NCBI GenBank assembly: GCA_977016875.1
Contig: CDRNST010000310.1
Coordinates: 1,116,001 to 1,180,000, forward strand
Reading direction: 5' to 3'
Length of the DNA: 64,000 nt
Source of the DNA: Pavona decussata
Taxonomy: Eukaryota
In this document: one piece after another, positions 17,254 through 60,786 of the stretch
Layout of the letters: each line of letters begins with the position of its first letter
How positions within the stretch are numbered: the stretch's first letter is position 1
Position numbers and translations under genes: made by a program
The notes under the pieces: model-generated
What the model saw: the letters and a program-made list of their open reading frames with translations, nothing else
Database searches by the model: none
Told to the model about the DNA's origin: nothing

Positions 17254-17983
17254 ATGGCAGAATGTTCACTCTGGAGATTTGCGTTGAAAAGTGTTTCAAA
17301 GAAACGTATTGTGTGGATTAAAACCGTCTCGTGCAGATGTTTTAGCGCTGGTAGACAATTGAGAAAAGATAAAGACGTCCCGGTAGACCAAAAACTGTTG
17401 GAAATCTTGGTCTGTCCATTGTCTAAAAAGCCATTAAGGTAAGCTTTAGCTGAAACTAATAATTTGAAGTCACTAATTGAAACTTAACTATAAAGGCTCA
17501 TATATGAGGTTATAGTAGCCATTAATGCGGCCTGATTACTATTTCTGCTGTTTTCTTTTTGGGCCACCCTGGTAAAATCTCTGTAGTACTCCTTTTGTGC
17601 AATGCTTGTACAAAATGCAAACTGCTACTTCAATGAAGGACAGCAAGTTGTTATTAATATTGGAAAGGCTACATTCTGGTGACTTTATATCAAATGGACC
17701 TGAGTAAGCCCCACCCTCACCCCTTCCTCCTCCTCCAACCTAATCCCCACATCCACTACCCCCTAGAACATCCTTATGTTCTCTTGAGAGAACCCAAAAT
17801 ATTAACTTTGATCTTGTTTTGTACATTAGGTACAACAGTGCAACAAATGAACTGATTTCAGATGAAATTGGTGTGGCATTTCCGATACAAAATGGTATTC
17901 CAAATCTTATACCCCATGATGGGAGACTTCTGAAGAGAGATAACACGACTTCAACTAAACCTCCCTCAAGCAAAGACAAGTAA
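17254..17983 (+). CDS. PYURF: Protein preY, mitochondrial (PYURF; Trm112-like methyltransferase chaperone), 2 exons, 112 aa
   Basis: Exons 17254-17438 and 17830-17983 (AG|gtaagc ... cattag|G). Translation contains LLEILVCPLSKKPLRYNSATNELISDEIGVAFPIQNGIPNLIP, matching the preY/Trm112-like core. The basic, Ser/Arg-rich N-terminus resembles a mitochondrial presequence. Confidence 0.93.
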
Positions 17984-19522: not shown

Positions 19523-21261
19523 TAATAGTTTAGCTTGGTAAACCATTCCCACACTGACAGGAAACATGAAGAAATAGTCAGTGACTAGATAACAGAAAAT
19601 AAGAGCACTGCTAACAGGTCAGTAAAAATATGGTTTTACATTAAAAGTTAATTTTGACTCAAGTAAAATAAATATTTTATTATATGTTTTTTGCAATGGT
19701 GTTTCAAACATTCACCCACTGTCTGTCAACTTAAGTACTGTACATGGTCTTCTCTTAACTTTCAAATTGATTTGCTTTAATTTCCGATAGTTGTTGATTA
19801 ATTACTCAGCCAACAGCTTAAATATCTTTTTACTTTTTGACTGCACCTTTCAATAACATGCAAACTCTGACCTTGAAAACCAACTAACAATTTGCATATT
19901 TTACTACCATCAATCATAATCATATCAACAACCGACTGACTGAAAAATACAGTAACCGACGAAGTGGATTGAAATCTGCCAATCGGCACATTTGACCTTT
20001 TGACTTTGTTGAGCCAAATGACTTTGTTTTCTACGAGGTCCACAGCACTGATTTACAGCAGTGAAAAACAAGACAGGAGCGGAGGTTTTCCCCTATGTAA
20101 ACCATATTCATGTAGGTATGGGTGGTGGTGCCAAATGAAAGATACCATACATTCAAATCAGAGTTTGGTGAATGCTTCAATTGAAAGAGGTCAAATCAAG
20201 ATATACTTGTAACAAGTGTTTGTAACCCTGAATACATGTGTGAAAACTAGCCATTTGAATTGAGCCTAAACCATAATCAGGTGTTCACTAAAGTATTTCC
20301 CAGGAGGAGTTACAGTATATGATATGACTGGTACACTAAAATCAGAAGCTCACTCAACTGAACTCCAAGTTAAAGAGAACTCAAGTTGTTGGAAATAATG
20401 TCCACTAAAACTCCAATTTTTTTGGAATAACTGGAAGAACATTTTACTGTAAAAAAACTGGATCTAATAATATTATTATTCCCTCTTTTTTACTGTGAAA
20501 TTTTCTGTGTGCTGCTATTTTGGATTAATTGTGTGACATATCATAATTTGCTTGCTGTTATTCTCAGGAAGCAGAATTACTTTTGTGTGAAATAACTGGA
20601 TAACCAAAATAATGATGTTGTGAAATCCAAAATGGTGGCCTCAGGAAAATGAAAAGCAAAAATAGGTGATTATCAAATCCTGCTTTGTCTAATATTGAAA
20701 CATGACTTCCATGTTTTCCAGCACAATATGAAATAAAACAGAACAATTTAGTGTTTATTTGTTTGGAGTAGAGGTTGTCAAAGCCAAAACCTGACTTCAT
20801 AATTTTGAAAAAATAATAATGAATGGATAATGTATACCAAATAACAGATTCTTTTAGACTCAAGCTGTTTGTTTCAGTCATATTTTCGATTCCCTGTAAT
20901 AAATTTAACTCATTAAGCTCAGTCTTCATTCTGGCACTTCTTCTTAGTGCATAGTACTCTTTAAATTTCTAAAGCATAATCTACTGCAAATATCCATCCA
21001 TATTAATCTGCACTTAACTCTTTCAAGAGAAAAAGCAACTTTAGAAAATATGAAGTGCAGCTTACACATGGGTGCAAGCATTTGGGCAAGGATTGGTCTA
21101 TAATCACCAATTTAACAATATTGTTAATTATTGAGTTGTGGTCTTAAAATGGACCTTTGTGGTAATAACGTTATTTTTAAATATTAAGGAATTATTTTTA
21201 TATTCTCAAAAACAAAGAAAGGCATTGTAATGATAACAAAGCACATTCGGCTTCACTCTCT

Positions 21262-22533
21262 TTATACTTGTTCAAGAATGTCATCTAGATGAGCTATGTA
21301 ATTAATAGCATATTTCAGTATTTTGATCTTGGGGAGCTTAGTATCACATTGGTATCCAGGAATTAACTGTCTAAGGTCCTGATAAGCACTATTTAACTGT
21401 GCCACTCTGCGACGTTCATGCTCATTGGCTAAAAGCCGGTTTAGTTTTGATCTTTGTCGACCTTTCATGTGATAAGCCTCTTTTTCTTTCTTCCATTCTT
21501 CCTCCTCCTCAGGCATGACAAAGTCAGAACTGAAAGTCCGCGGCCGAGATGTTGCGGTCCTTGTATTGTAGGGTCTTACAGTGCCATGTTTGATTCCCTT
21601 CTTTGATTTGTGTTGTTTTGTTGTTGCCTTATGAGGCAGCTTATCTTGAAAATCCATATCGGTTTTGTTCCCATTGCACAGCTCACCTTTGTAAGTTTTC
21701 ACAGTCTGTGGCTCAGGAAATTCTTGTTTAATCTTTGCCTGAGGTGTACATATTTTCTTCTCTCTCCCAGAAACATTTGCTCGCTTAACCTTGTTGTTAT
21801 TTAACTGAGTTGTATTCTGCGAAGGAGAAGTCTGTCCACTGTCTTCTGTTTCCATTACATGATCCTTGTCAGTAGTTTCCATCTTCATTTTCTTTGTAGG
21901 AATCTCATTAGTTATGGTGTGGTCATCTTCCCTTTCAGTATTGTCATGAACTGGCACCTCCTCCTCCTCCTCTTCCTCCTCCTTCCTTGCAACCTGTAAG
22001 CCAGTCTCCATTCTGCGCCTAAGCTTTGCACAATCTTTCTCAGTGCGAGGTCCAGATACATCCTGCCCCATTTCCTGAGGCATGTCTCTTGGTTGGTAGT
22101 CTTGTCCTGCCAATGGCATGGGCAGTGATATGGGAGAAAATTGACCATGCTTTGGCAAGAACATTCCCTGGTGGCCACTGTTACAATTTACACCACTGCA
22201 CCAAGGAGAAATATGCACTCGAGTAACATCGGGCATTAATTTTGGAGTTGGAAAAAAACGACAGAAACAGCCAGCATGCTCATCTAGTTTTCTGTGAAAG
22301 CACTCGCAACAGTGGCGTCCCATACAGTTATTTCTATCTGCTAGCTTGACACAGCTGTCAGTTGCATGGGCAAATGTTCTTGGTCTATAGGGACAGCATG
22401 GTGGGTTTGAATGGCACATTGTGGTCTGGTTCCTTTCAAGCGAGCTGAAATGTAAAATAGGAGGATGAAATTCAATGCACTGTCTGGGGGGCATGACTGC
22501 GTGATGTTGGGCTGCAAAGTGCAAAGCATCCTG

Positions 22534-22564
<31 letters not shown>

Positions 22565-22574
22565 TTGTTGTTGT
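21262..22574 (-). CDS. Main exon of the bHLH gene (poly-Asn, Cys/His-rich region, poly-Glu tracts, C-terminal bHLH)
   Basis: Long uninterrupted ORF ending in a basic-helix-loop-helix signature (N..ER.R...LN.A...LR..IP......KL.KI.IL..AI.YI..L). Confidence 0.93.
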
Positions 22575-25500
22575 CTGAAAGATAAGAAATGTGAAGGGAG
22601 CAAACATATCAGGTAAAGAATTTCATGTTCTTGTCAGTAAACCTTGTGCAAATGACATGGACCAAATGGTTAATTGGCTCATACCAGGGGCTTTTGCACA
22701 TACTGGGAACAGTATGTTCTTACCAAAGATGCTGATGGATTTCATTATTTTTCTGTTCATGAAAAAAGTGCCCCAATCATTATGAAATGCAAATGACCCC
22801 TATATCCTATGTTATCATAATCATGTGTTTTTACAACAAAAGTTTTAATTTAAAAAACCCGGGAAAATGAGTTGTTGTCAGGTAAGGGGCGGACCATTAG
22901 AAATCACGGGAGGGGGGGGGGGGGGTGACAATTTCCAAAAACAAATTCCTGCAAAGGAAAATTGCCAAAAAAAAAAGAAAAAATTCTGCAGGCAGTTCAC
23001 CATCCAAAAAAAAATTCCTGCAAGTAAACTGAATCAAAGTACAATATCAAAACACAACGTCTACCAGTTTTATTGCACATTTCAAGAATATAACCTGCTC
23101 TTTTATCATTTTAACACATTTTACATGTATTACTGTTTTTAGAAGTGACAATGCAACCTGATCTCCTGCTCATTTATGGATTTCAAATGTAGAAGAAATA
23201 TAAAACAATTTGACTATAGCAAACCTTCAACAATCTTTTTTTTTTGAGTAGGAAATAGAGCAAGGGGTGACAGGCCTGCAAATTATGGAAACATTGACGC
23301 CTCGAGTCATGAGGTGCGATACAATTAGTAGCTCATTTCTTTCTCGATAATCGCGATACTCGAATTTTGCGAAAATCGAGACTCCAAAGAGTGTCACCTT
23401 GAGCTGTACTGTAATTAAACTGTGCGGAGCTTTGTATGTCTAAAAGTTCTGTCGAAAAAAAAATCGTGCAGAGTTTCCATGTTGAAAAAAAAATTCATGC
23501 AGATAAATAATTATTGGACTAAAAAAAAAATTCATCCACTGAAAAATTTTTACCCCCCCCCCCCCCCTACCGTGATTTCTAATGGTCCGCCCCTTACAAT
23601 CGGTAACATGCTCACGAGTTGTCACGCAAGTTGTGCGGCAGCGAAGCGTGACAGAGTGTGCCGACCCGAACAACGGCGCAAAGAAGAAAAACCCCGAGGG
23701 CGCGAACGATCAATTGTTCTTTTTTGGTCATATGAACAGGTGGGAGTCCTAAGCAATGGAACATTTAATTAAACCAAGTAGTAGATCATCCCCTCCTTTG
23801 AAAAAGCCGTGAGGGATATACCTTCTTTTATTGCCCTTTCAATATACTATCAGAGAACAATAAAAGCGGCTGTTAAACACAGCAGTGGGACACAACAGTA
23901 CATTTTAACACCTTCTGCGGTCGGCAAATGGAAAGAAAGAAAATGCATGGGTCTTTTAGATGTGGTTGGAAATCGTCGCGATTTAAACATATGCAACTCT
24001 CACTATACAAACACGTTTGCAAAGCGATAAAGTGATTTTTCTTCCTTATCAGGAAAAATTGCTATCGGTGGACTGACTCTACTGTGAGAATTGATTCTAC
24101 AAGGTGACTCCGATAACCTCGAAATACCGCCGGCCTCGAAAATCATACGGCGGGATTTAAATTGTCCTTTTTTAAAATTTCTTTTCATACTTTAATTTCA
24201 AATTTGACAGCAGAACGCGGTTGTAAACAGTGCTTAATCCCTCGAGGAGGCCTGCTATTAAAACAATCTTTTCACTGTTGTTTGGTGCAGTTGAACTGCA
24301 GGAAATTACCAAGGATCCTTTCCCAAGAACCTTTCTTGGCCATTTAGGAAGAAAATCGTTTTTTTCTCCGATGTTTGCGCGCTCGAGGCACCCGAATCTC
24401 GCAATGAAAAACAGCAGGAAATGCCAGATGTAATATCGCCGGCTAAATCTACCTGAAGACGAACCATCTGGTTAAATGAGTGACAAAATAGTGTTCCTTT
24501 ATCACGTAGACTGCAGTCGTTTGCGTTTCAGGGTTCAATTGTTTTCCGAAAAGACTTGTTTAACAACCAGAACAACGGCCATTAACCCACTTTAGCTTTC
24601 TTAAAGAACCCATTTCATCTCCAGAAAACCATTTTAAACGCGCATATCAGACCCAGCTGTTTTCATTTGCGATGCGTTATCGAAAACTTGGCATTCTTGG
24701 AATAGCTAGTTTTGACTAGCAGAGTTCATTTGAAAGGCAAGGACGGCACAGAGACAGAAGAATCGATTTCCCATCTGTTATATTCTAATTTTCACCACCA
24801 AGAAAAAACCCTTTTCCGTGCAAACAATCCCCAAATTACAGTTTCGCGAAAACAAAGTAAAGAATGGTTTCCTGGTAGCGCAGTTGTTTTCAAGTTCCCT
24901 CCCAGATTTGAATCGTCGTTTTCTTTGACTTTTCACCTCAGTTGAATAGTATTCAATAAGAGACGATTTTGTTTTTATCTTTGTCAAGTGTTTGGTCCAA
25001 ATAATTCACTCTGTGCGCGATAAGATGTACGAAAACAGAAACAGCTTAATTTGAGTTTGCCGTCCAATTTCCTTGAGCATCGACAACTGAAAACCAATGC
25101 GCAACAAAAAGCTCTGACCGACCATAAAATGTAGTATTGTTATCGAACATGTAGTGAACATCTGTTTCGAGATAAAGAATACATCTTTGAATGCTAACAA
25201 AAATTATTTATTTTTCATTTAAATTTTCCTTGAAAAAAAAAAAGCCTTTTGTTAGTCTGGGCAAATTGTTCCCTTTTTCAAAGGAAAAATAACGAAAATT
25301 CTAACAAGCGAGAGTCCGATTTTCGCTTTCTTTTTCTTTAATTTTTTAAGGTTGATAAAGTGAAATGTTTCGAAGCGAAAGTCCTTCCACCGAAAAATAA
25401 CCTGAAATTAACATAGCAAATAAAACATTGTCACTTTGTAGGTTCCGAGTTGCATTGGATTTTCACGATACCCTCTTCACTTTTGAAAAGAAAATTTCTT

Positions 25501-26942
25501 TTATTCGAATTACCAACATCATTAGCAAGCGCTTTATGTCTAGCTTGCGAACATTAACATATCTAAAAGATGAACTCCCAATTTTCCAGAGTTCATTTCA
25601 GGCTTGTGTTTTCCCTAAATTTGTATTTATCGTCCCCGAATTAATAACAAATCTCGGAAAAGAATATACAACGAGTTTATAGCGAAGAAGACCCCGCGCT
25701 TCTTCGTTCTTGCCAGGATTTCTCCTTTTCTTTTCTTTTTTTTTTCTTTTTCTATTATCATTTTAAATCGCCCATAGTCAATCATCTGTACCAGATGGTT
25801 GAAAAGCCATCGCCTTCAATTTTGGAGCTAATGCACTCTCAGCCCTTCACCGCTTTGATTAAAATTCATAACTTTTCGTTTTTATCGGCAATAGTACTGA
25901 GCATATGTCATTGAAGAGTTGAGTGGCACAGCGGGTCATCCCCTAAGGTCCATTTAGCATTTCCCGCGCTGCTTACTGTAATTTTATTTGTCCCGAAAAT
26001 CGTTCTAAGGCTTTTAACATATTTTTGGCCCGCTCAGTCTTGCACTAATTTCCGAAATGTTCCTCTTTCCTGTGAGTTTATTGTGCGCGGTTGTTTGTAT
26101 TTTCTCGCGCGGTTCAATCTCGCTGGAACAGCTGTGACATTAGGTTTCATGTGTTTACAGAACCGTTTTAATTTATGGCTAAATTCATAAAACAACATTT
26201 CCATTGCTTTTCGCGTTGGAGTTGCTAGGTATCAACCATCGACTGCGATCGCAGGCGATGGAAATCCTATTTAGCCGCGAAAATAAAGTCGAATTTCACT
26301 CAATGTCAATTCCCTTTCAAACCTGTGAGAATTCAAACAGAAAATCGCCACCCGGACCAGCGACTTGGCAAAACATCTGCCGGCCATCTCCCAGGTGTGT
26401 GTATACTGAAATTACTGTTACTTGCAAAGTGCTAATAACAAAAAGACCTAGAGATTTCTTAAAGGCCCGAAAGCCCGCTTGATGCCAAGAAAACCATTAA
26501 AATCCCCCTTCTCAGGCGTGCGAATGAATGAAATATGCATTGTAAATTTCTCGTTCGCTGCTGCTAGTTCCCTTGGCTTGTAACGTAGTAAATTTGACAA
26601 ATGCGGAGCCGAATAATGACACCGTAAGCAATTCGAACAAGCTTGAATTAATTAAAGAAATCTCTCCTCTTAACTGAAACGCGAGTCGTTCCGCGATTTT
26701 CGCAACGTTTGGTCCAGTGATTTGGAACGGAGGTTCTTCCTCGGCGTGTTGACATCTGAACTGAACCGTACCCATCGACACACCGATCTGGGGAGGAATC
26801 GCGAATAGAACGCACCGATCTATCGTTCGAGAACACGTGCGGATTTCGAGGAAATAATCAGGTTTACCAGAAACTTACCAGTACTGTTCGCAGATTTCTC
26901 ATCTTCGCTTTTTCGCCTCTTCACGAGAAACGATCTCGGCAT
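21262..26942 (-). CDS. SNAG-domain plus group-A bHLH transcription factor (Net/ATOH8-like or unassigned bHLH), 2 exons, about 458 aa
   Basis: Exon 1 (26879-26942) reads ATG CCG AGA TCG TTT CTC GTG AAG AGG = MPRSFLVKR and ends at a G|GTAAGT phase-1 donor. Exon 2 (21262-22574) follows the acceptor cttatctttcag, and phase 1 places it in the frame of the 420-aa ORF. C-terminal bHLH: RLLANEHERRRVAQLNSAYQDLRQLIPGYQCDTKLPKIKILKYAINYIAHL. Confidence 0.85.
22885..23594. mobile_element. TA-flanked non-autonomous DNA transposon in the SNAG-bHLH intron
   Basis: TA|AGGGGCGGACCATTAGAAATCACGG-poly(G) ... poly(C)-CCGTGATTTCTAATGGTCCGCCCCT|TA. Confidence 0.8.
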
Positions 26943-27024
26943 GATCGTCAAAGAGAAGCAAACTTTTGCGATCCCCTCGCACCCGCCGCTCGGTCAGACG
27001 ATAGCGCAAAATTCAAGCTCCATC

Positions 27025-27043
27025 CAGATGTCAAATATAAATA
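27025..27043 (-). promoter_or_regulatory. Candidate core promoter of the SNAG-bHLH gene (TATA-like TATTTATA plus adjacent CATCTG E-box)
   Basis: TATA-like element about 95 nt upstream of the MPRSF ATG. No ATG lies between the implied start site (~27010) and 26942. Confidence 0.35.
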
Positions 27044-28815
27044 AACTCCAGCCCAGCCTCACTTTGACACATGTTTGCAACAACTTCCGGTTTGACAAAT
27101 TTCACAGCTTTTAAAATTTACGCAGGGACTTCAAGTTACAAACATAATACTCAGTAAAAAACAGGAAGTTTTGCCTTTTTTACATGCAAGCTGATGGGCC
27201 ATTTTTTTTTCTGAAATAACTAAAACTATATTTAGAATACCGGAACCGGAAACTGTTTTGCCCTTCTTACTTCCGGTTTCATTGCAGATTGGCTGTTTTG
27301 ATTGTAAGCGGCAATTTCAAAATATTTACATGTTTTAAATCTTCGATTAGGATTTAATTTCTGTTTACTTGTCACAGAATTCTCTTGAAAAGACGTATTA
27401 TCCACATAACCACCGTCTTTTACATAACGTTGACGTTTTTTATGAGGAGCTCTTTTTTCAGCTGCAACTGATCGGCACTGAACGTTATTTATTTTTTTAG
27501 GATGGAATGATTTTTTAAACGTGCTCAGTGTTTTCTGCAATGAAAAAATAAGGGTTTCTGCAATAACAACTTCGAAAACTAATTATCAAACAGCTTTTTA
27601 AGCCGGTATTGAATTAAATTAATTGTGAAATTAGTGAAAAGTTGTACTACTATGTACGTATTTTTAACATCTCAAGTTCTTTTTCAAGCCGAACGCGGCT
27701 ATAATAGATCCATTACATTTAATATCGTGAAAGCTCTCCTCGCACTTAGAACAAATGGAAAAAATGTAATGCGTTTTCATTAGTAAAATTTTGGCCTTTC
27801 TCAGGCCCAAAGTTCCTATAAAGAAGATTCTTATATATATAAAAAGAGTGTACCGCGATAAAGCGTTTCCACCAAATGGTTTTAGCAGACTCGACGAAAA
27901 ATAAGTACACCGGTATATGTGATCTTGTGATTTATGTACACCAAAGTATGTTTCACTTTACACCCGCGGGCACACTCTCCGGGGTTTTGCAATTTTGTTT
28001 TCACTTGAATACCCGTTGACTAGCTTCCCTCGCAGAGGCTCGTCACGCAATCTTTCCTCCCGTTGTGGAGGAAAGGTTGCGTGACGAGCTAAAAGAGCTT
28101 CCGCGAGGGAGGCTACCATGCAGTTGGCATTCTGTTCCTCTTTTGCTCAAGAATCCACGGGGAGAACTCCCGAATATCGTGCTTGCTCAGTATCTTGCGT
28201 TCTCCCCGCGGATTCTCGAGCACTAGAGAGACTGCTCGTAGTGTATTTTGTTTCCCACTCCCAGGTATACAGCTACAAACAATTGCCTGGCCTGTTCCAC
28301 CCTCTCAGAAAGCAGTTTTAGCCGATCGTTTTATCAAACTGGGCTGATATGCTAATTTGGCCACTTTAAACTGACATTTCGAATGTTAGCCTTCACCTGA
28401 CGAAGGGCCACTCAAAACTAATTTCCGCATTCCCTTTCTGTTAGCCCTTCGTCAACGGAAGGCTAAAATGTCAGTTTAGAGTGGCCAAATTACAAGTCCC
28501 CCGTTCGTCCCGCAGTTTTGCTCGCTCCCCTTTCTCCTCCCCCTCCCCGATTACGCCTGAGGAAAAATGGGTTCGTGAATCGTGATTGGGACCCCCTCCC
28601 TCCTCTTTACACCCCTGAGACAAGGAGAGGGGGAGGAAGCCCGCATCTAACCTCCTTCTAACCGTTTCCTTCCACGGGAAATAATAAACCTCACATAAAA
28701 TTATCGCTTAGACAGCAGCTACTGCACTATGGAAGTATAGTAAGACGTTTTTATTGCGAGATTTCCTTTATTTCTATGTCCTTGACCAAAATACGAAAAT
28801 CTCATACTAATCCTT

Positions 28816-31917: not shown

Positions 31918-32809
31918 CAGGGGCGTAGCCAGGATTTCTAGGAGGGGGGTTCCAAATTGGTTCCAACGAAAACGGTTGGTCTAAAATCCTTACATTATGT
32001 ACGTACAAGACTTTGGCGTTTACACTACGCCAACAGAAGACGCCTTGGTTGCCGTTAAGCGAACGTGTTTATCACTTCCTCGATATTTATGTCTCAGTGG
32101 TAATCGGATGTTCATCACTCTCGCTCGCTTGACATGGTCGACCTCAGGTATGTTTTTAACCTTCTTAGTGTACTGAATGAGCGCTCACATTCAGCTGACG
32201 TCATCGGCAACGTGCACAAAATGCATATCGGGGTGTGGATGTTAGGAAAGAACTCTCGATCGCATGCTGCGAGTGTCTGAACTGTACTGGTGGGAAGGTC
32301 GGCGTCCTCAGTGCTGCACCACTTTCTCTTCCATCGGAGGAGCTCAACATCAACCACATGAGGAGAAGGAAGGTCGTTCTCATAAAACTCCAGAGCTGCT
32401 TCAATGTCAGGATTTCTGTCTCCGACGGCTACCAGCTCGGGAAGAAGATTAAAAAGGCTGGACAAGACAGCATCATTAGTAAGATTGAAGTCTGTTTTCA
32501 TCTCTGATCGTAGATGGTCTAGAAGGGGAATAGCAACTGCTCTCTTATAGTAATTAGATGGTGTCTGGACTGGTACATTGTCGCGATGCTGCTGCTAATT
32601 GATCCGGCGCGGGATGGAAGGCATACTCACCTACATTTGCAGCGGTAGTGACCGCTAGATCGAACCACTCGGTCCAGATGTCGAGAGTCCATTACACTCT
32701 TGCTGGGATAAAATCGCTGTTAAAAATAGGAGAGGGGGTTCCTTGACGCGACAGGGGGGGGGGGGGGGGGTTGCAGAACCCCTGGAACCCTCCCCTGGCT
32801 ACGCCCCTG
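31918..32809 (-). mobile_element. Internally deleted hAT DNA transposon (P52rIPK/THAP12-like transposase remnant)
   Basis: TIRs CAGGGGCGTAGCCAGG ... CCTGGCTACGCCCCTG; the internal - strand ORF carries the hAT C-terminal dimerisation motif. Confidence 0.85.
32115..32615 (-). pseudogene. hAT transposase C-terminal fragment (hATC dimerisation domain)
   Basis: ...QQHRDNVP...YYKRAVAIPLLDHL...FPNIH...LCTLPMTSAECERSFSTLRRLKTYLRSTMSSER; truncated, with an upstream in-frame stop and no catalytic core. Confidence 0.8.
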
Positions 32810-59994: not shown

Positions 59995-60381
59995 TCAATG
60001 AGCGGCCTTGCTTCCCTTCTCTGATTTTTTAGGCAACAGAACAGCCTGAATGTTTGGCAACACACCACCCTGCGCGATCGTCACACCAGCCAACAGCCTG
60101 TTTAACTCTTCGTCGTTTCGAATTGCTAGTTGAAGATGGCGAGGGATAATTCTCGTTTTCTTGTTATCCCGGGCAGCATTGCCGGCCAATTCCAAGATTT
60201 CTGCCGAGAGGTACTCTAAGACTGCCGCCATGTAAACAGGAGCCCCAGCACCAACTCGCTCGGCGTAATTTCCCTTTCGTAACAAACGATGGATTCTGCC
60301 CACCGGAAACTGAAGCCCTGCTCTTGAAGAACGTGTCTTCGATTTGGTGCCCTTAGCTTTGCCTTTTCCCCGTCCTGACAT
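59995..60381 (-). CDS. H2A: Histone H2A, 128 aa (canonical-like core, no SQ motif)
   Basis: MSGRGKG...[32 protein letters not shown]...[17 protein letters not shown]. The true ATG is at 60381; the ORF-track N-terminal extension is upstream sequence. Confidence 0.97.
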
Positions 60382-60786
60382 TTTTCTTCTCAAGTTTCTT
60401 TTCTTGCTTTGGCTGTGGTACAAAGAAGAAGGACGTCAATACAACAGTCAAAACTCGAAAATGCACGTACCGGAAGTGTTTGTTATCACCTGAATGAATA
60501 TTTTACAACAGTTATGGATCGAACGCACCAAGTTTCGTCCAATCAAACTCGCCAATGCTAACCGGAAGTAAAGGATGTGTACATTTACCTGCTCCCTCAG
60601 AGGTACGCATTCAAAATAAACCAATCACATTACAGTATTTTCGATCCCAGAGAATTTCGATCCTGGACCACTCGAATATAAATAGTGGAAGGCCAACCTC
60701 TGCAGTTTTCCCAAACTGAATTTAGTCGTTCCGTTCTTGGCTGGGCTAATTTGTGAACCGTATAGATTAAGAGCATTTACTTCAAT
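60382..60786. promoter_or_regulatory. Divergent H2A/H2B promoter region
   Basis: 405 bp containing three CCAAT boxes (~60539, ~60552, ~60621), two CCGGAAGT ETS sites (~60470, ~60562) and TATAAATA at 60677-60684. Confidence 0.6.

What the first reader, a model, noticed from the sequence alone, without database searches (positions are those of the whole stretch)
21262..26942. Hidden SNAG-domain exon fused to a bHLH: a candidate SNAG-bHLH repressor
Seen: a 64-nt exon 4.3 kb upstream of the bHLH ORF, absent from the ORF track, encodes MPRSFLVKRRKSEDEKSANST and ends in a consensus G|GTAAGT donor. Its phase (1) matches the acceptor at 22575, opening the bHLH frame. No C2H2 zinc-finger or homeobox exon is visible between it and PYURF. 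Known: MPRSFLVK at the extreme N-terminus is the SNAG motif of Snail/Slug/Scratch, Gfi1, Insm1 and Ovol zinc-finger factors (also Gsx homeoproteins). It mimics the histone H3 tail and inserts into LSD1/KDM1A-CoREST. Inference: this is an E-box-binding bHLH that recruits LSD1 directly. I do not recognise this architecture as a named family, so it may be an undescribed lineage-specific repressor class created by exon shuffling.
Basis: partly seen in the sequence, partly recalled or inferred. Interest (0 to 1): 0.92.

Follow-up and report, generated by a model that had tools for sequence, protein, structure and literature searches.

The report
Coral SNAG-motif bHLH transcription factor gene
A two-exon coral gene joins the short "SNAG" repressor peptide, otherwise known from zinc-finger factors such as Snail and Gfi1, to a bHLH DNA-binding domain; the junction is seen in transcripts and the arrangement is conserved from stony corals to sea anemones, but I found no paper that describes it.

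Summary
On the minus strand, a 64-nt first coding exon (26942-26879) encodes MPRSFLVKRRK... and ends in G|GTAAGT. Its phase-1 intron is 4,304 nt. Exon 2 (22574-21262) ends in a Pfam HLH domain.

- **Transcripts:** contigs from three independent studies join 26879 directly to the start of exon 2.
- **Chance:** only two exact MPRSFLVK-coding sites exist in the 602-Mb genome. The other heads a classical zinc-finger gene.
- **Conservation:** NCBI gene models from Montipora, Pocillopora, Desmophyllum and Nematostella start with MPRSFLVKR and end in the same bHLH. Five unannotated genomes carry an upstream, same-strand, phase-1 SNAG exon. The nine-residue peptide is invariant while its codons vary.
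- **Family limits:** the family is sharply bounded (at least 190 bits, then 65 bits for generic Hand-like bHLHs). No bilaterian member was found.
- **Prior record:** its bHLH domain sits in published survey alignments, but no searched paper mentions the SNAG-bHLH architecture.

LSD1-CoREST recruitment and E-box binding remain inference, and exon shuffling is only compatible with the data. This is a new variant of a known kind.

The parts
26943..27012 (-). 5' untranslated region, minimum extent; no ATG inside it; A at -3 of the start codon
   Evidence: Contig X1 record 8 reaches 27012 and X6 record 16 reaches about 26990; sequence read
26879..26942 (-). Exon 1 coding part, 64 nt: MPRSFLVKRRKSEDEKSANST plus the first base of an Asp codon (SNAG motif at the extreme N-terminus)
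   Evidence: Peptide MPRSFLVKR is invariant in 6 genomes with 2-4 synonymous codons at each of codons 2-9
26873..26878 (-). Splice donor GTAAGT (phase 1)
   Evidence: Three transcript contigs end their match exactly at 26879 and continue in exon 2
22575..26878 (-). Intron, 4,304 nt, GT..AG; holds a repeat at about 23066-23490 whose contigs run on into other loci
22575..22600 (-). Polypyrimidine tract and acceptor AG (ends at 22575)
   Evidence: The X1 loose end at 26879 reads, reverse-complemented, AC AAC AAC..., which is the start of exon 2
21262..22574 (-). Exon 2 coding part (436 codons after the split codon, plus the TAA stop at 21264-21262)
   Evidence: Covered by contigs of X1, X3, X4 and X6
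22527..22574 (-). (AAC)n poly-Asn tract at the start of exon 2; its length differs between runs, always by multiples of 3
   Evidence: 48 nt in the reference against 36 nt (X3) and 21 nt (X6); the letters read from X1 show 6 AAC before ATC against 9 in the reference
22261..22416 (-). Cys/His-rich segment (residues 53-104 of exon 2); C91 and C102 are nearly invariant; relatives show paired CxCxxC motifs; not folded with confidence
21487..21576 (-). Conserved motif before the basic region (YNTR ... SDFV.P ... EWK); function unknown
   Evidence: Nearly invariant Y335 N336 T337, invariant R338, nearly invariant D350 and W360
21268..21459 (-). Basic region and helix-loop-helix at the C-terminus (residues 372-435 of exon 2)
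   Evidence: Pfam HLH E = 8e-17. AlphaFold helices at 376-403 and 415-435, the only confident part. 44 invariant columns
21100..21261 (-). 3' untranslated region, minimum extent (contigs run on beyond 21100)
   Evidence: X4 record 13 and X6 record 16 reach 21100 and continue

Best explanation
Shown: this is an expressed two-exon gene of a stony coral. Its product starts with a perfect SNAG motif (Met-Pro-Arg-Ser-Phe-Leu-Val-Lys). About 350 mostly disordered residues follow, with a Cys/His-rich patch and a conserved YNTR...SDFV...EWK motif. The protein ends in a group-A-type bHLH. It belongs to a sharply bounded, conserved family found in Scleractinia, Actiniaria and some unnamed relatives.

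Inferred: after removal of the initiator Met, the free N-terminal Pro-Arg-Ser-Phe peptide mimics the histone H3 tail and inserts into the catalytic cleft of LSD1/KDM1A, as in Snail1, Gfi1 and Insm1. The bHLH dimerises, probably with an E-protein, and binds E-box DNA through the retained Glu and Arg residues of the basic region (ANEHERRR). Together these would bring LSD1-CoREST-HDAC to E-box targets and repress them. This does with a bHLH what the known SNAG factors do with C2H2 zinc fingers.
For: - **Splicing:** contigs of runs X1, X3 and X6 (three studies) match up to 26879 and then continue in exon 2. X3 record 12 and X6 record 16 lie on both exons. The X1 loose end spells the start of exon 2.
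- **Domain:** HLH at E = 8e-17. Only the bHLH folds with confidence.
- **Gene models:** P0018, P0021, P0025 and P0031 (Montipora, Pocillopora, Desmophyllum, Nematostella) all start MPRSFLVKR and end in the same bHLH.
- **Unannotated genomes:** loci L001, L002, L011, L012 and L013 each have an MPRSFLVKR exon 3.3-7.1 kb upstream on the same strand, with a phase-1 GT[AG]AG donor and a phase-1 acceptor.
- **Selection:** the peptide is invariant while codons 2-9 each use 2-4 synonymous codons. Selection therefore acts on the peptide.
- **Orthology:** microsynteny with the Trm112p/PYURF gene in L002, L012 and L013.
- **Rarity:** only 2 exact sites in 602 Mb against 0.07 expected.
- **Partner exists in the phylum:** Lsd1 is present and developmentally required in Nematostella (PMC8786827). 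The SNAG motif of NvInsm1 is discussed as an Lsd1/CoREST interaction motif (PMC9020782).
Against: - No binding, DNA-recognition or repression test was possible here.
- I could not show LSD1 in this coral's own genome. The SWIRM and amine-oxidase scans did not land on one locus.
- The basic region has His where most group-A bHLHs have Arg/Lys (ANEHERRR), so its E-box preference is uncertain.
- NCBI models a second Nematostella isoform (P0056) with another first exon that lacks SNAG. The motif may therefore be optional.
- The runs used are only guessed to be RNA. The exact GT..AG skip is what argues that they are.
- The tool masked the AAC repeat, so the joint is read letter by letter only in X1.
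Confidence: 0.6

Rival explanations
1. The gene model is right, but the SNAG peptide does not work mainly through LSD1. It could serve nuclear import or protein stability, or bind other SNAG partners. The protein could also be an activator or a context-dependent factor.
For: No interaction was tested. The linker carries further conserved motifs of unknown role (Cys/His patch, YNTR...EWK) that may hold the real effector function. From memory, SNAG domains of Snail proteins have been reported to have partners other than LSD1.
Against: All eight residues are identical to Gfi1/Slug-type SNAG. They sit at the extreme N-terminus, as LSD1 insertion requires. They are invariant under synonymous change across deep divergences.
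Confidence: 0.2
2. SNAG is an alternative first exon and not the constant one. The main product starts at another exon or at the first in-frame ATG of exon 2 (about 22494, MPPRQ...). The SNAG form would be a regulated minority isoform.
For: Nematostella isoform X1 (P0056) has a different, non-SNAG first exon joined at the same point. Exon 2 has an internal in-frame ATG.
Against: All three runs with contigs at the 5' end of exon 2 join it to 26879, and none shows another upstream exon. The open frame upstream of the internal ATG, with its poly-Asn tract and good acceptor, is used. The SNAG exon is conserved in every genome examined.
Confidence: 0.1
3. The protein is not a DNA-bound repressor. 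It is a titrating factor: an HLH partner that sequesters E-proteins, or a soluble pseudo-substrate that blocks LSD1.
For: SNAG peptides are competitive with the H3 tail in the LSD1 cleft (from memory of the Snail1-LSD1 structure). The basic region deviates at one canonical position (His for Arg/Lys).
Against: The basic region keeps the Glu and the Arg triplet used for E-box contact. It is among the most conserved stretches of the protein, with invariant columns from K376 to N394. Id-type HLH proteins lack such a region.
Confidence: 0.08
4. Chance match or assembly artefact: the MPRSFLVK frame is not a real exon of this gene.
For: The exon is only 64 nt, and the tool did not tabulate the joint because of the repeat mask.
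Against: Expectation is 7e-6 per window. There are spliced contigs in three studies and conservation with the same phase in ten genomes.
Confidence: 0.01

Closest known systems
SNAG-domain zinc-finger repressors (Snail/Slug/Scratch, Gfi1/Gfi1b, Insm1)
   Same: The first eight residues are identical (MPRSFLVK) and sit at the extreme N-terminus, followed by basic residues. They are encoded by a short first coding exon. The classical SNAG zinc-finger gene of this same genome (L005) also has a 64-nt, phase-1 first coding exon. The expected mechanism is insertion into LSD1 and recruitment of CoREST/HDAC.
   Different: The DNA-binding domain is a C-terminal bHLH, not C2H2 fingers. No C2H2 pattern exists anywhere in 10-34 kb, and Pfam finds only HLH. 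It therefore works like these factors but is not a member of their families.
Hand and Mesp families of group-A bHLH factors
   Same: They are the nearest by sequence outside the family. The top non-family hits of the profile search are Hand-like, and one is named Hand2-like by NCBI. In a published alignment the Nematostella and Acropora orthologues stand beside the human MESP/MSGN rows. Helix 2 is of the K-I-x-x-L-x-x-A-I-x-Y-I-x-H-L type.
   Different: Scores drop from at least 190 bits within the family to 65 bits. That is no higher than for many other group-A families. The quick tree separates the family by a long starred branch. Hand and Mesp proteins have no SNAG motif (from memory).
Hairy/Hes bHLH-Orange repressors with C-terminal WRPW
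   Same: The design principle is the same: a bHLH DNA-binding domain plus a terminal short linear motif that recruits a corepressor.
   Different: The motif, the terminus and the corepressor differ (WRPW to Groucho/TLE at the C-terminus, against SNAG to LSD1 at the N-terminus). The bHLH group differs too (E against A-like). This comparison rests on memory and was not tested here.
TAL1/SCL-LSD1 complexes of vertebrate blood cells
   Same: A group-A bHLH brings LSD1-CoREST to E-box targets (from memory). TAL1 is among the best solved-structure matches of this bHLH.
   Different: As far as I recall, TAL1 has no SNAG motif and reaches LSD1 by other contacts. Here the contact would be built into the bHLH protein's own N-terminus.

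Membership tests
SNAG-motif repressors (functional class) | Motif directly after the initiator Met, with Pro2-Arg3-Ser4-Phe5-Leu6-Val7-Lys8 | tested here: met
   The same holds in four gene models and five further genomes.
SNAG-motif repressors (functional class) | Binds LSD1/KDM1A-CoREST and represses transcription | not testable with these tools
   No intact cnidarian LSD1 sequence could be obtained by reference, so no complex prediction was sent. Bench assays are needed.
Snail/Scratch, Gfi, Insm1 families | C-terminal array of C2H2 zinc fingers | tested here: not met
   No C2H2 pattern in six frames of 10-34 kb. Only HLH in Pfam. Transcripts join SNAG directly to the bHLH exon.
bHLH superfamily, group A type | HLH domain above the Pfam cut-off | tested here: met
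   PF00010, 61.2 bits against a cut-off of 20.7. Two helices are modelled with confidence.
bHLH superfamily, group A type | Basic region with the E-box-contacting Glu and flanking Arg residues | tested here: met
   ANEHERRR was read. E384, E386 and R387-R389 are invariant in 23 sequences. One canonical basic position is His. DNA binding itself was not tested.
Hand family | Orthology: scores and tree placement with Hand proteins | tested here: not met
   65 bits against at least 190 within the family. A long starred branch separates them in the quick tree.
Pearl / Amber / Peridot (Gyoja et al. 2012) | Orthologues in bilaterians: molluscs and annelids for Pearl and Amber, cephalochordates and hemichordates for Peridot | tested here: inconclusive
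   No member outside the cnidarian-like set was found among 1.84 billion representatives. The original paper is not held, so its family labels for the Acropora and Nematostella genes could not be read.
Mesp family | Orthology with MESP1/2 and MSGN1 | tested here: inconclusive
   The only link is adjacency of rows in a published alignment. No Mesp-like protein stood out. No named reference tree was built.

The most novel reading that the evidence does not exclude
An anthozoan family of transcription factors gained the LSD1-binding SNAG peptide on a bHLH, independently of the zinc-finger SNAG factors. This may have happened by capture of a 64-nt, phase-1 first exon. The protein would be a direct, sequence-specific recruiter of Lsd1 in cnidarians, and alternative first exons could switch the repressor function on and off. 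It would then be a candidate for one of the unknown DNA-binding partners behind the Lsd1 requirement in Nematostella neural and cnidocyte differentiation.
Probability: 0.35. Interest if true: 0.75.

Novelty: new variant of a known kind. Interest (0 to 1): 0.62.

Why it matters
SNAG is the textbook example of a short peptide that mimics the histone H3 tail to capture LSD1. It is known almost only at the head of C2H2 zinc-finger repressors.

A conserved, expressed family that puts the same peptide on a bHLH shows that the module is portable between DNA-binding classes in nature. This gives an independent test of what the peptide alone can do.

It also offers a concrete, testable link between E-box regulation and Lsd1 in cnidarians. 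Lsd1 is needed for neural and cnidocyte differentiation there, but its recruiting factors are not known.

The Nematostella orthologue (LOC5519487) is in a tractable model that already has an Lsd1 knock-in line, so the question is directly testable.

Tried and rejected
- **Fold of exon 2:** the model built with 23 homologues had mean pLDDT 45. Only the bHLH was confident and the Cys/His patch did not fold, so no fold search was run.
- **Relaxed Pfam on six family members:** nothing beyond HLH.
- **Third word-index search with P0072:** this is a second bHLH family with CxCxxC motifs. The search gave no named relatives, and no SNAG lies within 10 kb upstream of it (L007). I do not claim kinship.
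- **LSD1 in this genome:** the Pfam SWIRM and amine-oxidase scans did not give a single locus. The 415-aa SWIRM ORF (L008) has no amine-oxidase part.
- **Complex prediction of SNAG with LSD1:** not sent, because no intact LSD1 sequence was available by reference.
- **Joined exon 1 + exon 2 protein:** not searched or folded. All searches were exon by exon or used natural full-length homologues.
- **Bacterial promoter/terminator scan:** not relevant to a eukaryote.
- **Accession and gene-id paper searches and the Gyoja 2012 paper:** nothing held.
- **Lookup of P0012:** not on record.
Full report
**Observation.** Read on the minus strand, the window has an ATG at 26942. It is followed by codons for MPRSFLVKRRKSEDEKSANST and one extra G, then GTAAGT. 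The exon is 64 nt, so the intron is in phase 1.

At 22600-22575 there is a pyrimidine-rich tract ending in ...tttcag. The next bases, AC, complete an Asp codon with the G of exon 1. That frame is closed just upstream by TGA at 22611-22609. It stays open for 436 codons to TAA at 21264-21262.

Pfam finds one domain, HLH, at residues 379-429 of exon 2 (E = 8e-17). No C2H2 pattern occurs in any frame between 10 and 34 kb.

**Is it more than chance?** From the window's base composition, an exact MPRSFLVK is expected 7e-6 times in 64 kb and 0.07 times in the whole 602-Mb assembly. A degenerate-codon scan of the assembly finds two sites, and none with the reversed control pattern. One site is this exon.

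The other, on contig C204 (L005), is followed out of frame by zinc-finger-like sequence. It is a conventional SNAG zinc-finger gene.

**Transcript evidence.** I laid Logan contigs of four runs from four studies on 21100-27090. The runs are only guessed to be RNA. However, their contig sets are small, and three of them hold contigs that skip exactly the 4.3-kb GT..AG interval.

- X3 record 12 (246 nt) lies on 26966-26879 and on 22526-22405.
- X6 record 16 (3,272 nt) lies on 26980-26879 and on 22526-21100, and runs on.
- X1 record 8 lies on 27012-26879. Its 31 loose letters, reverse-complemented, read AC AAC AAC ... ATC AAC AAC, which is the start of exon 2.

The tool masks the AAC repeat (22527-22580), so it did not tabulate the joint. 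The letters are seen only in X1. In X3 and X6 the unplaced stretch between the two pieces is 36 and 21 nt, against 48 nt in the reference. These differences are multiples of three, as expected for a polymorphic coding poly-Asn tract.

No run shows another upstream exon. X6 also has thin contigs inside the intron, which fit unspliced RNA or some DNA. The observed 5' UTR (27012-26943) holds no ATG, and the start codon has A at -3.

**Relatives.** Exon 2 alone finds 41 proteins, all with HLH. Most come from prokaryote-style ORF calls on coral or anemone contigs, so they begin inside or just before exon 2.

The four that come from eukaryotic gene models all begin MPRSFLVKR and end in the same bHLH. 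They are Montipora capricornis (P0018), Pocillopora meandrina (P0021), Desmophyllum pertusum (P0025) and Nematostella vectensis (P0031 = XP_001639375, LOC5519487).

I fetched the contigs behind five ORF-only relatives. In every one that had enough upstream DNA, I found an MPRSFLVKR exon on the same strand, 3.3-7.1 kb upstream, ending at a GT[AG]AG donor in phase 1. A pyrimidine-rich phase-1 acceptor lies in front of the conserved ORF (L001, L002, L011, L012, L013). Two short contigs (L003, L004) end before the expected place but show the phase-1 acceptor.

Across six genomes the first nine residues are invariant, while codons 2-9 each use two to four synonymous codons. Selection therefore acts on the peptide and not on the DNA.

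The Trm112p/PYURF gene lies next to the bHLH gene, convergently, in the window and in L002, L012 and L013. This supports orthology.

**How wide is the family?** I searched a profile of 13 members against 1.84 billion representative proteins. It finds 14 proteins up to 1e-30 (191 bits or more) and one N-terminal fragment (P0066, 94 bits). After that only generic bHLH matches remain, at 65 bits or less.

The best of those are Hand-like, and one is named Hand2-like by NCBI. No named member outside Hexacorallia appeared.

A quick maximum-likelihood tree was drawn in place of the unfinished careful search. It has SH-aLRT support only and a midpoint root. It gives the following picture.

- The family is separated from the Hand-like rows by a long starred branch.
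- There is a group around Nematostella.
- The window falls in a group with Montipora. Its nearest row is P0001, 98% identical.
- There is a group with Pocillopora.
- A weakly supported set of unnamed, more divergent lineages (P0034, P0041, P0037-39) also carries the SNAG exon.

I could not name those lineages.

**Anatomy of the protein.** Three features are conserved besides SNAG and the bHLH.

- The bHLH itself is almost invariant, with 44 invariant columns.
- A motif YNTR ... SDFV.P ... EWK lies just before the basic region.
- A Cys/His-rich patch appears in anemones and the divergent lineages as paired CxCxxC motifs.

AlphaFold2 with 23 sequences models only the two bHLH helices with confidence, and Pfam sees nothing else. 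The basic region reads ANEHERRR. The Glu and the Arg triplet typical of E-box-binding group-A proteins are kept, and one usually basic position is His.

**Mechanism.** The steps that are shown are the gene structure, its expression as a spliced RNA, its conservation, and purifying selection on the peptide.

The rest is inferred from established knowledge of SNAG factors, cited from memory and from PMC9020782.

- Met excision exposes Pro.
- The peptide occupies the H3-tail site of LSD1 and brings CoREST/HDAC.
- The bHLH dimer binds E-boxes, and target genes are repressed.

Lsd1 exists in Nematostella and is required for cnidocyte differentiation (PMC8786827). I could not pin down LSD1 in this coral's assembly with simple Pfam scans, and I had no intact LSD1 sequence to send to complex prediction.

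One caveat is that NCBI also models a Nematostella isoform with a different first exon that lacks SNAG (P0056). The motif may therefore be switched by promoter choice.

**What is known.** Papers holding SNAG, bHLH and Nematostella reduce to the NvInsm1 study, which does not concern this gene. Searches for the peptide string, for accession numbers, and for SNAG with helix-loop-helix and coral gave nothing relevant.

The bHLH domain itself has been catalogued. In the supplementary alignment of the Sycon bHLH survey (PMC5064789), the rows Nvec_fgenesh1_pg_scaffold_14000163 and Adig_gs002045003 carry exactly this domain. They are printed beside human MESP/MSGN. Those surveys used the domain only.

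I could not read which label, if any, Gyoja et al. 2012 gave it. Pearl, Amber and Peridot are defined by bilaterian members, and none was found here.

**Origin.** In this genome, the SNAG zinc-finger gene L005 and the SNAG-bHLH gene both have a 64-nt first coding exon ending in phase 1. This is what capture of a first exon would leave, but two cases do not prove it.

**Limits.** Exons were used by reference, and natural full-length homologues stood in for the spliced product.

**Verdict.** The functional reading is plausible and well motivated but untested. The architecture is a new variant of a known kind. It is present in databases as uncharacterised proteins, and to my searches it is undescribed in the literature.

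Noticed in passing
window 22527-22574 (-): The (AAC)n poly-Asn tract at the start of exon 2 differs in length between runs: 48 nt in the reference against 36 nt and 21 nt, and 6 AAC against 9 in the letters read from X1. The differences are always in frame.
   Followed up: partly
L005 = G000:C204:545756-548779 (site at 547256-547279, +): This is the only other exact MPRSFLVK-coding site in the genome. It is a 64-nt, phase-1 first coding exon, followed downstream and out of frame by zinc-finger-like sequence, so it is probably a classical SNAG zinc-finger gene (Gfi/Snail/Scratch type).
   Followed up: partly
P0056 against P0031 (Nematostella LOC5519487): NCBI models two isoforms that differ only in the first coding exon, one with SNAG and one without. 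This suggests promoter-dependent inclusion of the motif.
   Followed up: no
P0072, P0095, P0138, P0171, P0190 (L007 for P0072): A second unnamed bHLH family of 570-710 aa has several CxCxxC motifs, an ANWLERKRVAELN basic region and a conserved extension after the bHLH. No SNAG exon lies within 10 kb upstream in L007. Its relation to the SNAG-bHLH family is unclear.
   Followed up: partly
window 17254-17983 (+): A two-exon Trm112p-like (PYURF) gene lies convergent with the bHLH gene. This neighbourhood is kept in L002, L012 and L013. A CSRNP_N gene lies near the bHLH in L001, L011 and L012 but is absent from this window.
   Followed up: yes
window 23066-23490: A repeat inside the intron is covered by higher-depth contigs of X1 and X4 on both strands that run on into unrelated sequence. 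It is probably a dispersed element transcribed elsewhere.
   Followed up: no
window 32115-32501 (-): An ORF carries a hAT-family dimerisation domain (E = 5e-9). It is a transposase remnant.
   Followed up: no
window 59995-60423 (-): An intact histone H2A ORF.
   Followed up: no
G000 contigs C52, C243, C209: Tandem arrays of intronless ORFs of 490-550 aa match the whole amine-oxidase (PF01593) profile, and some carry stops. This looks like an expanded flavin amine-oxidase family.
   Followed up: no
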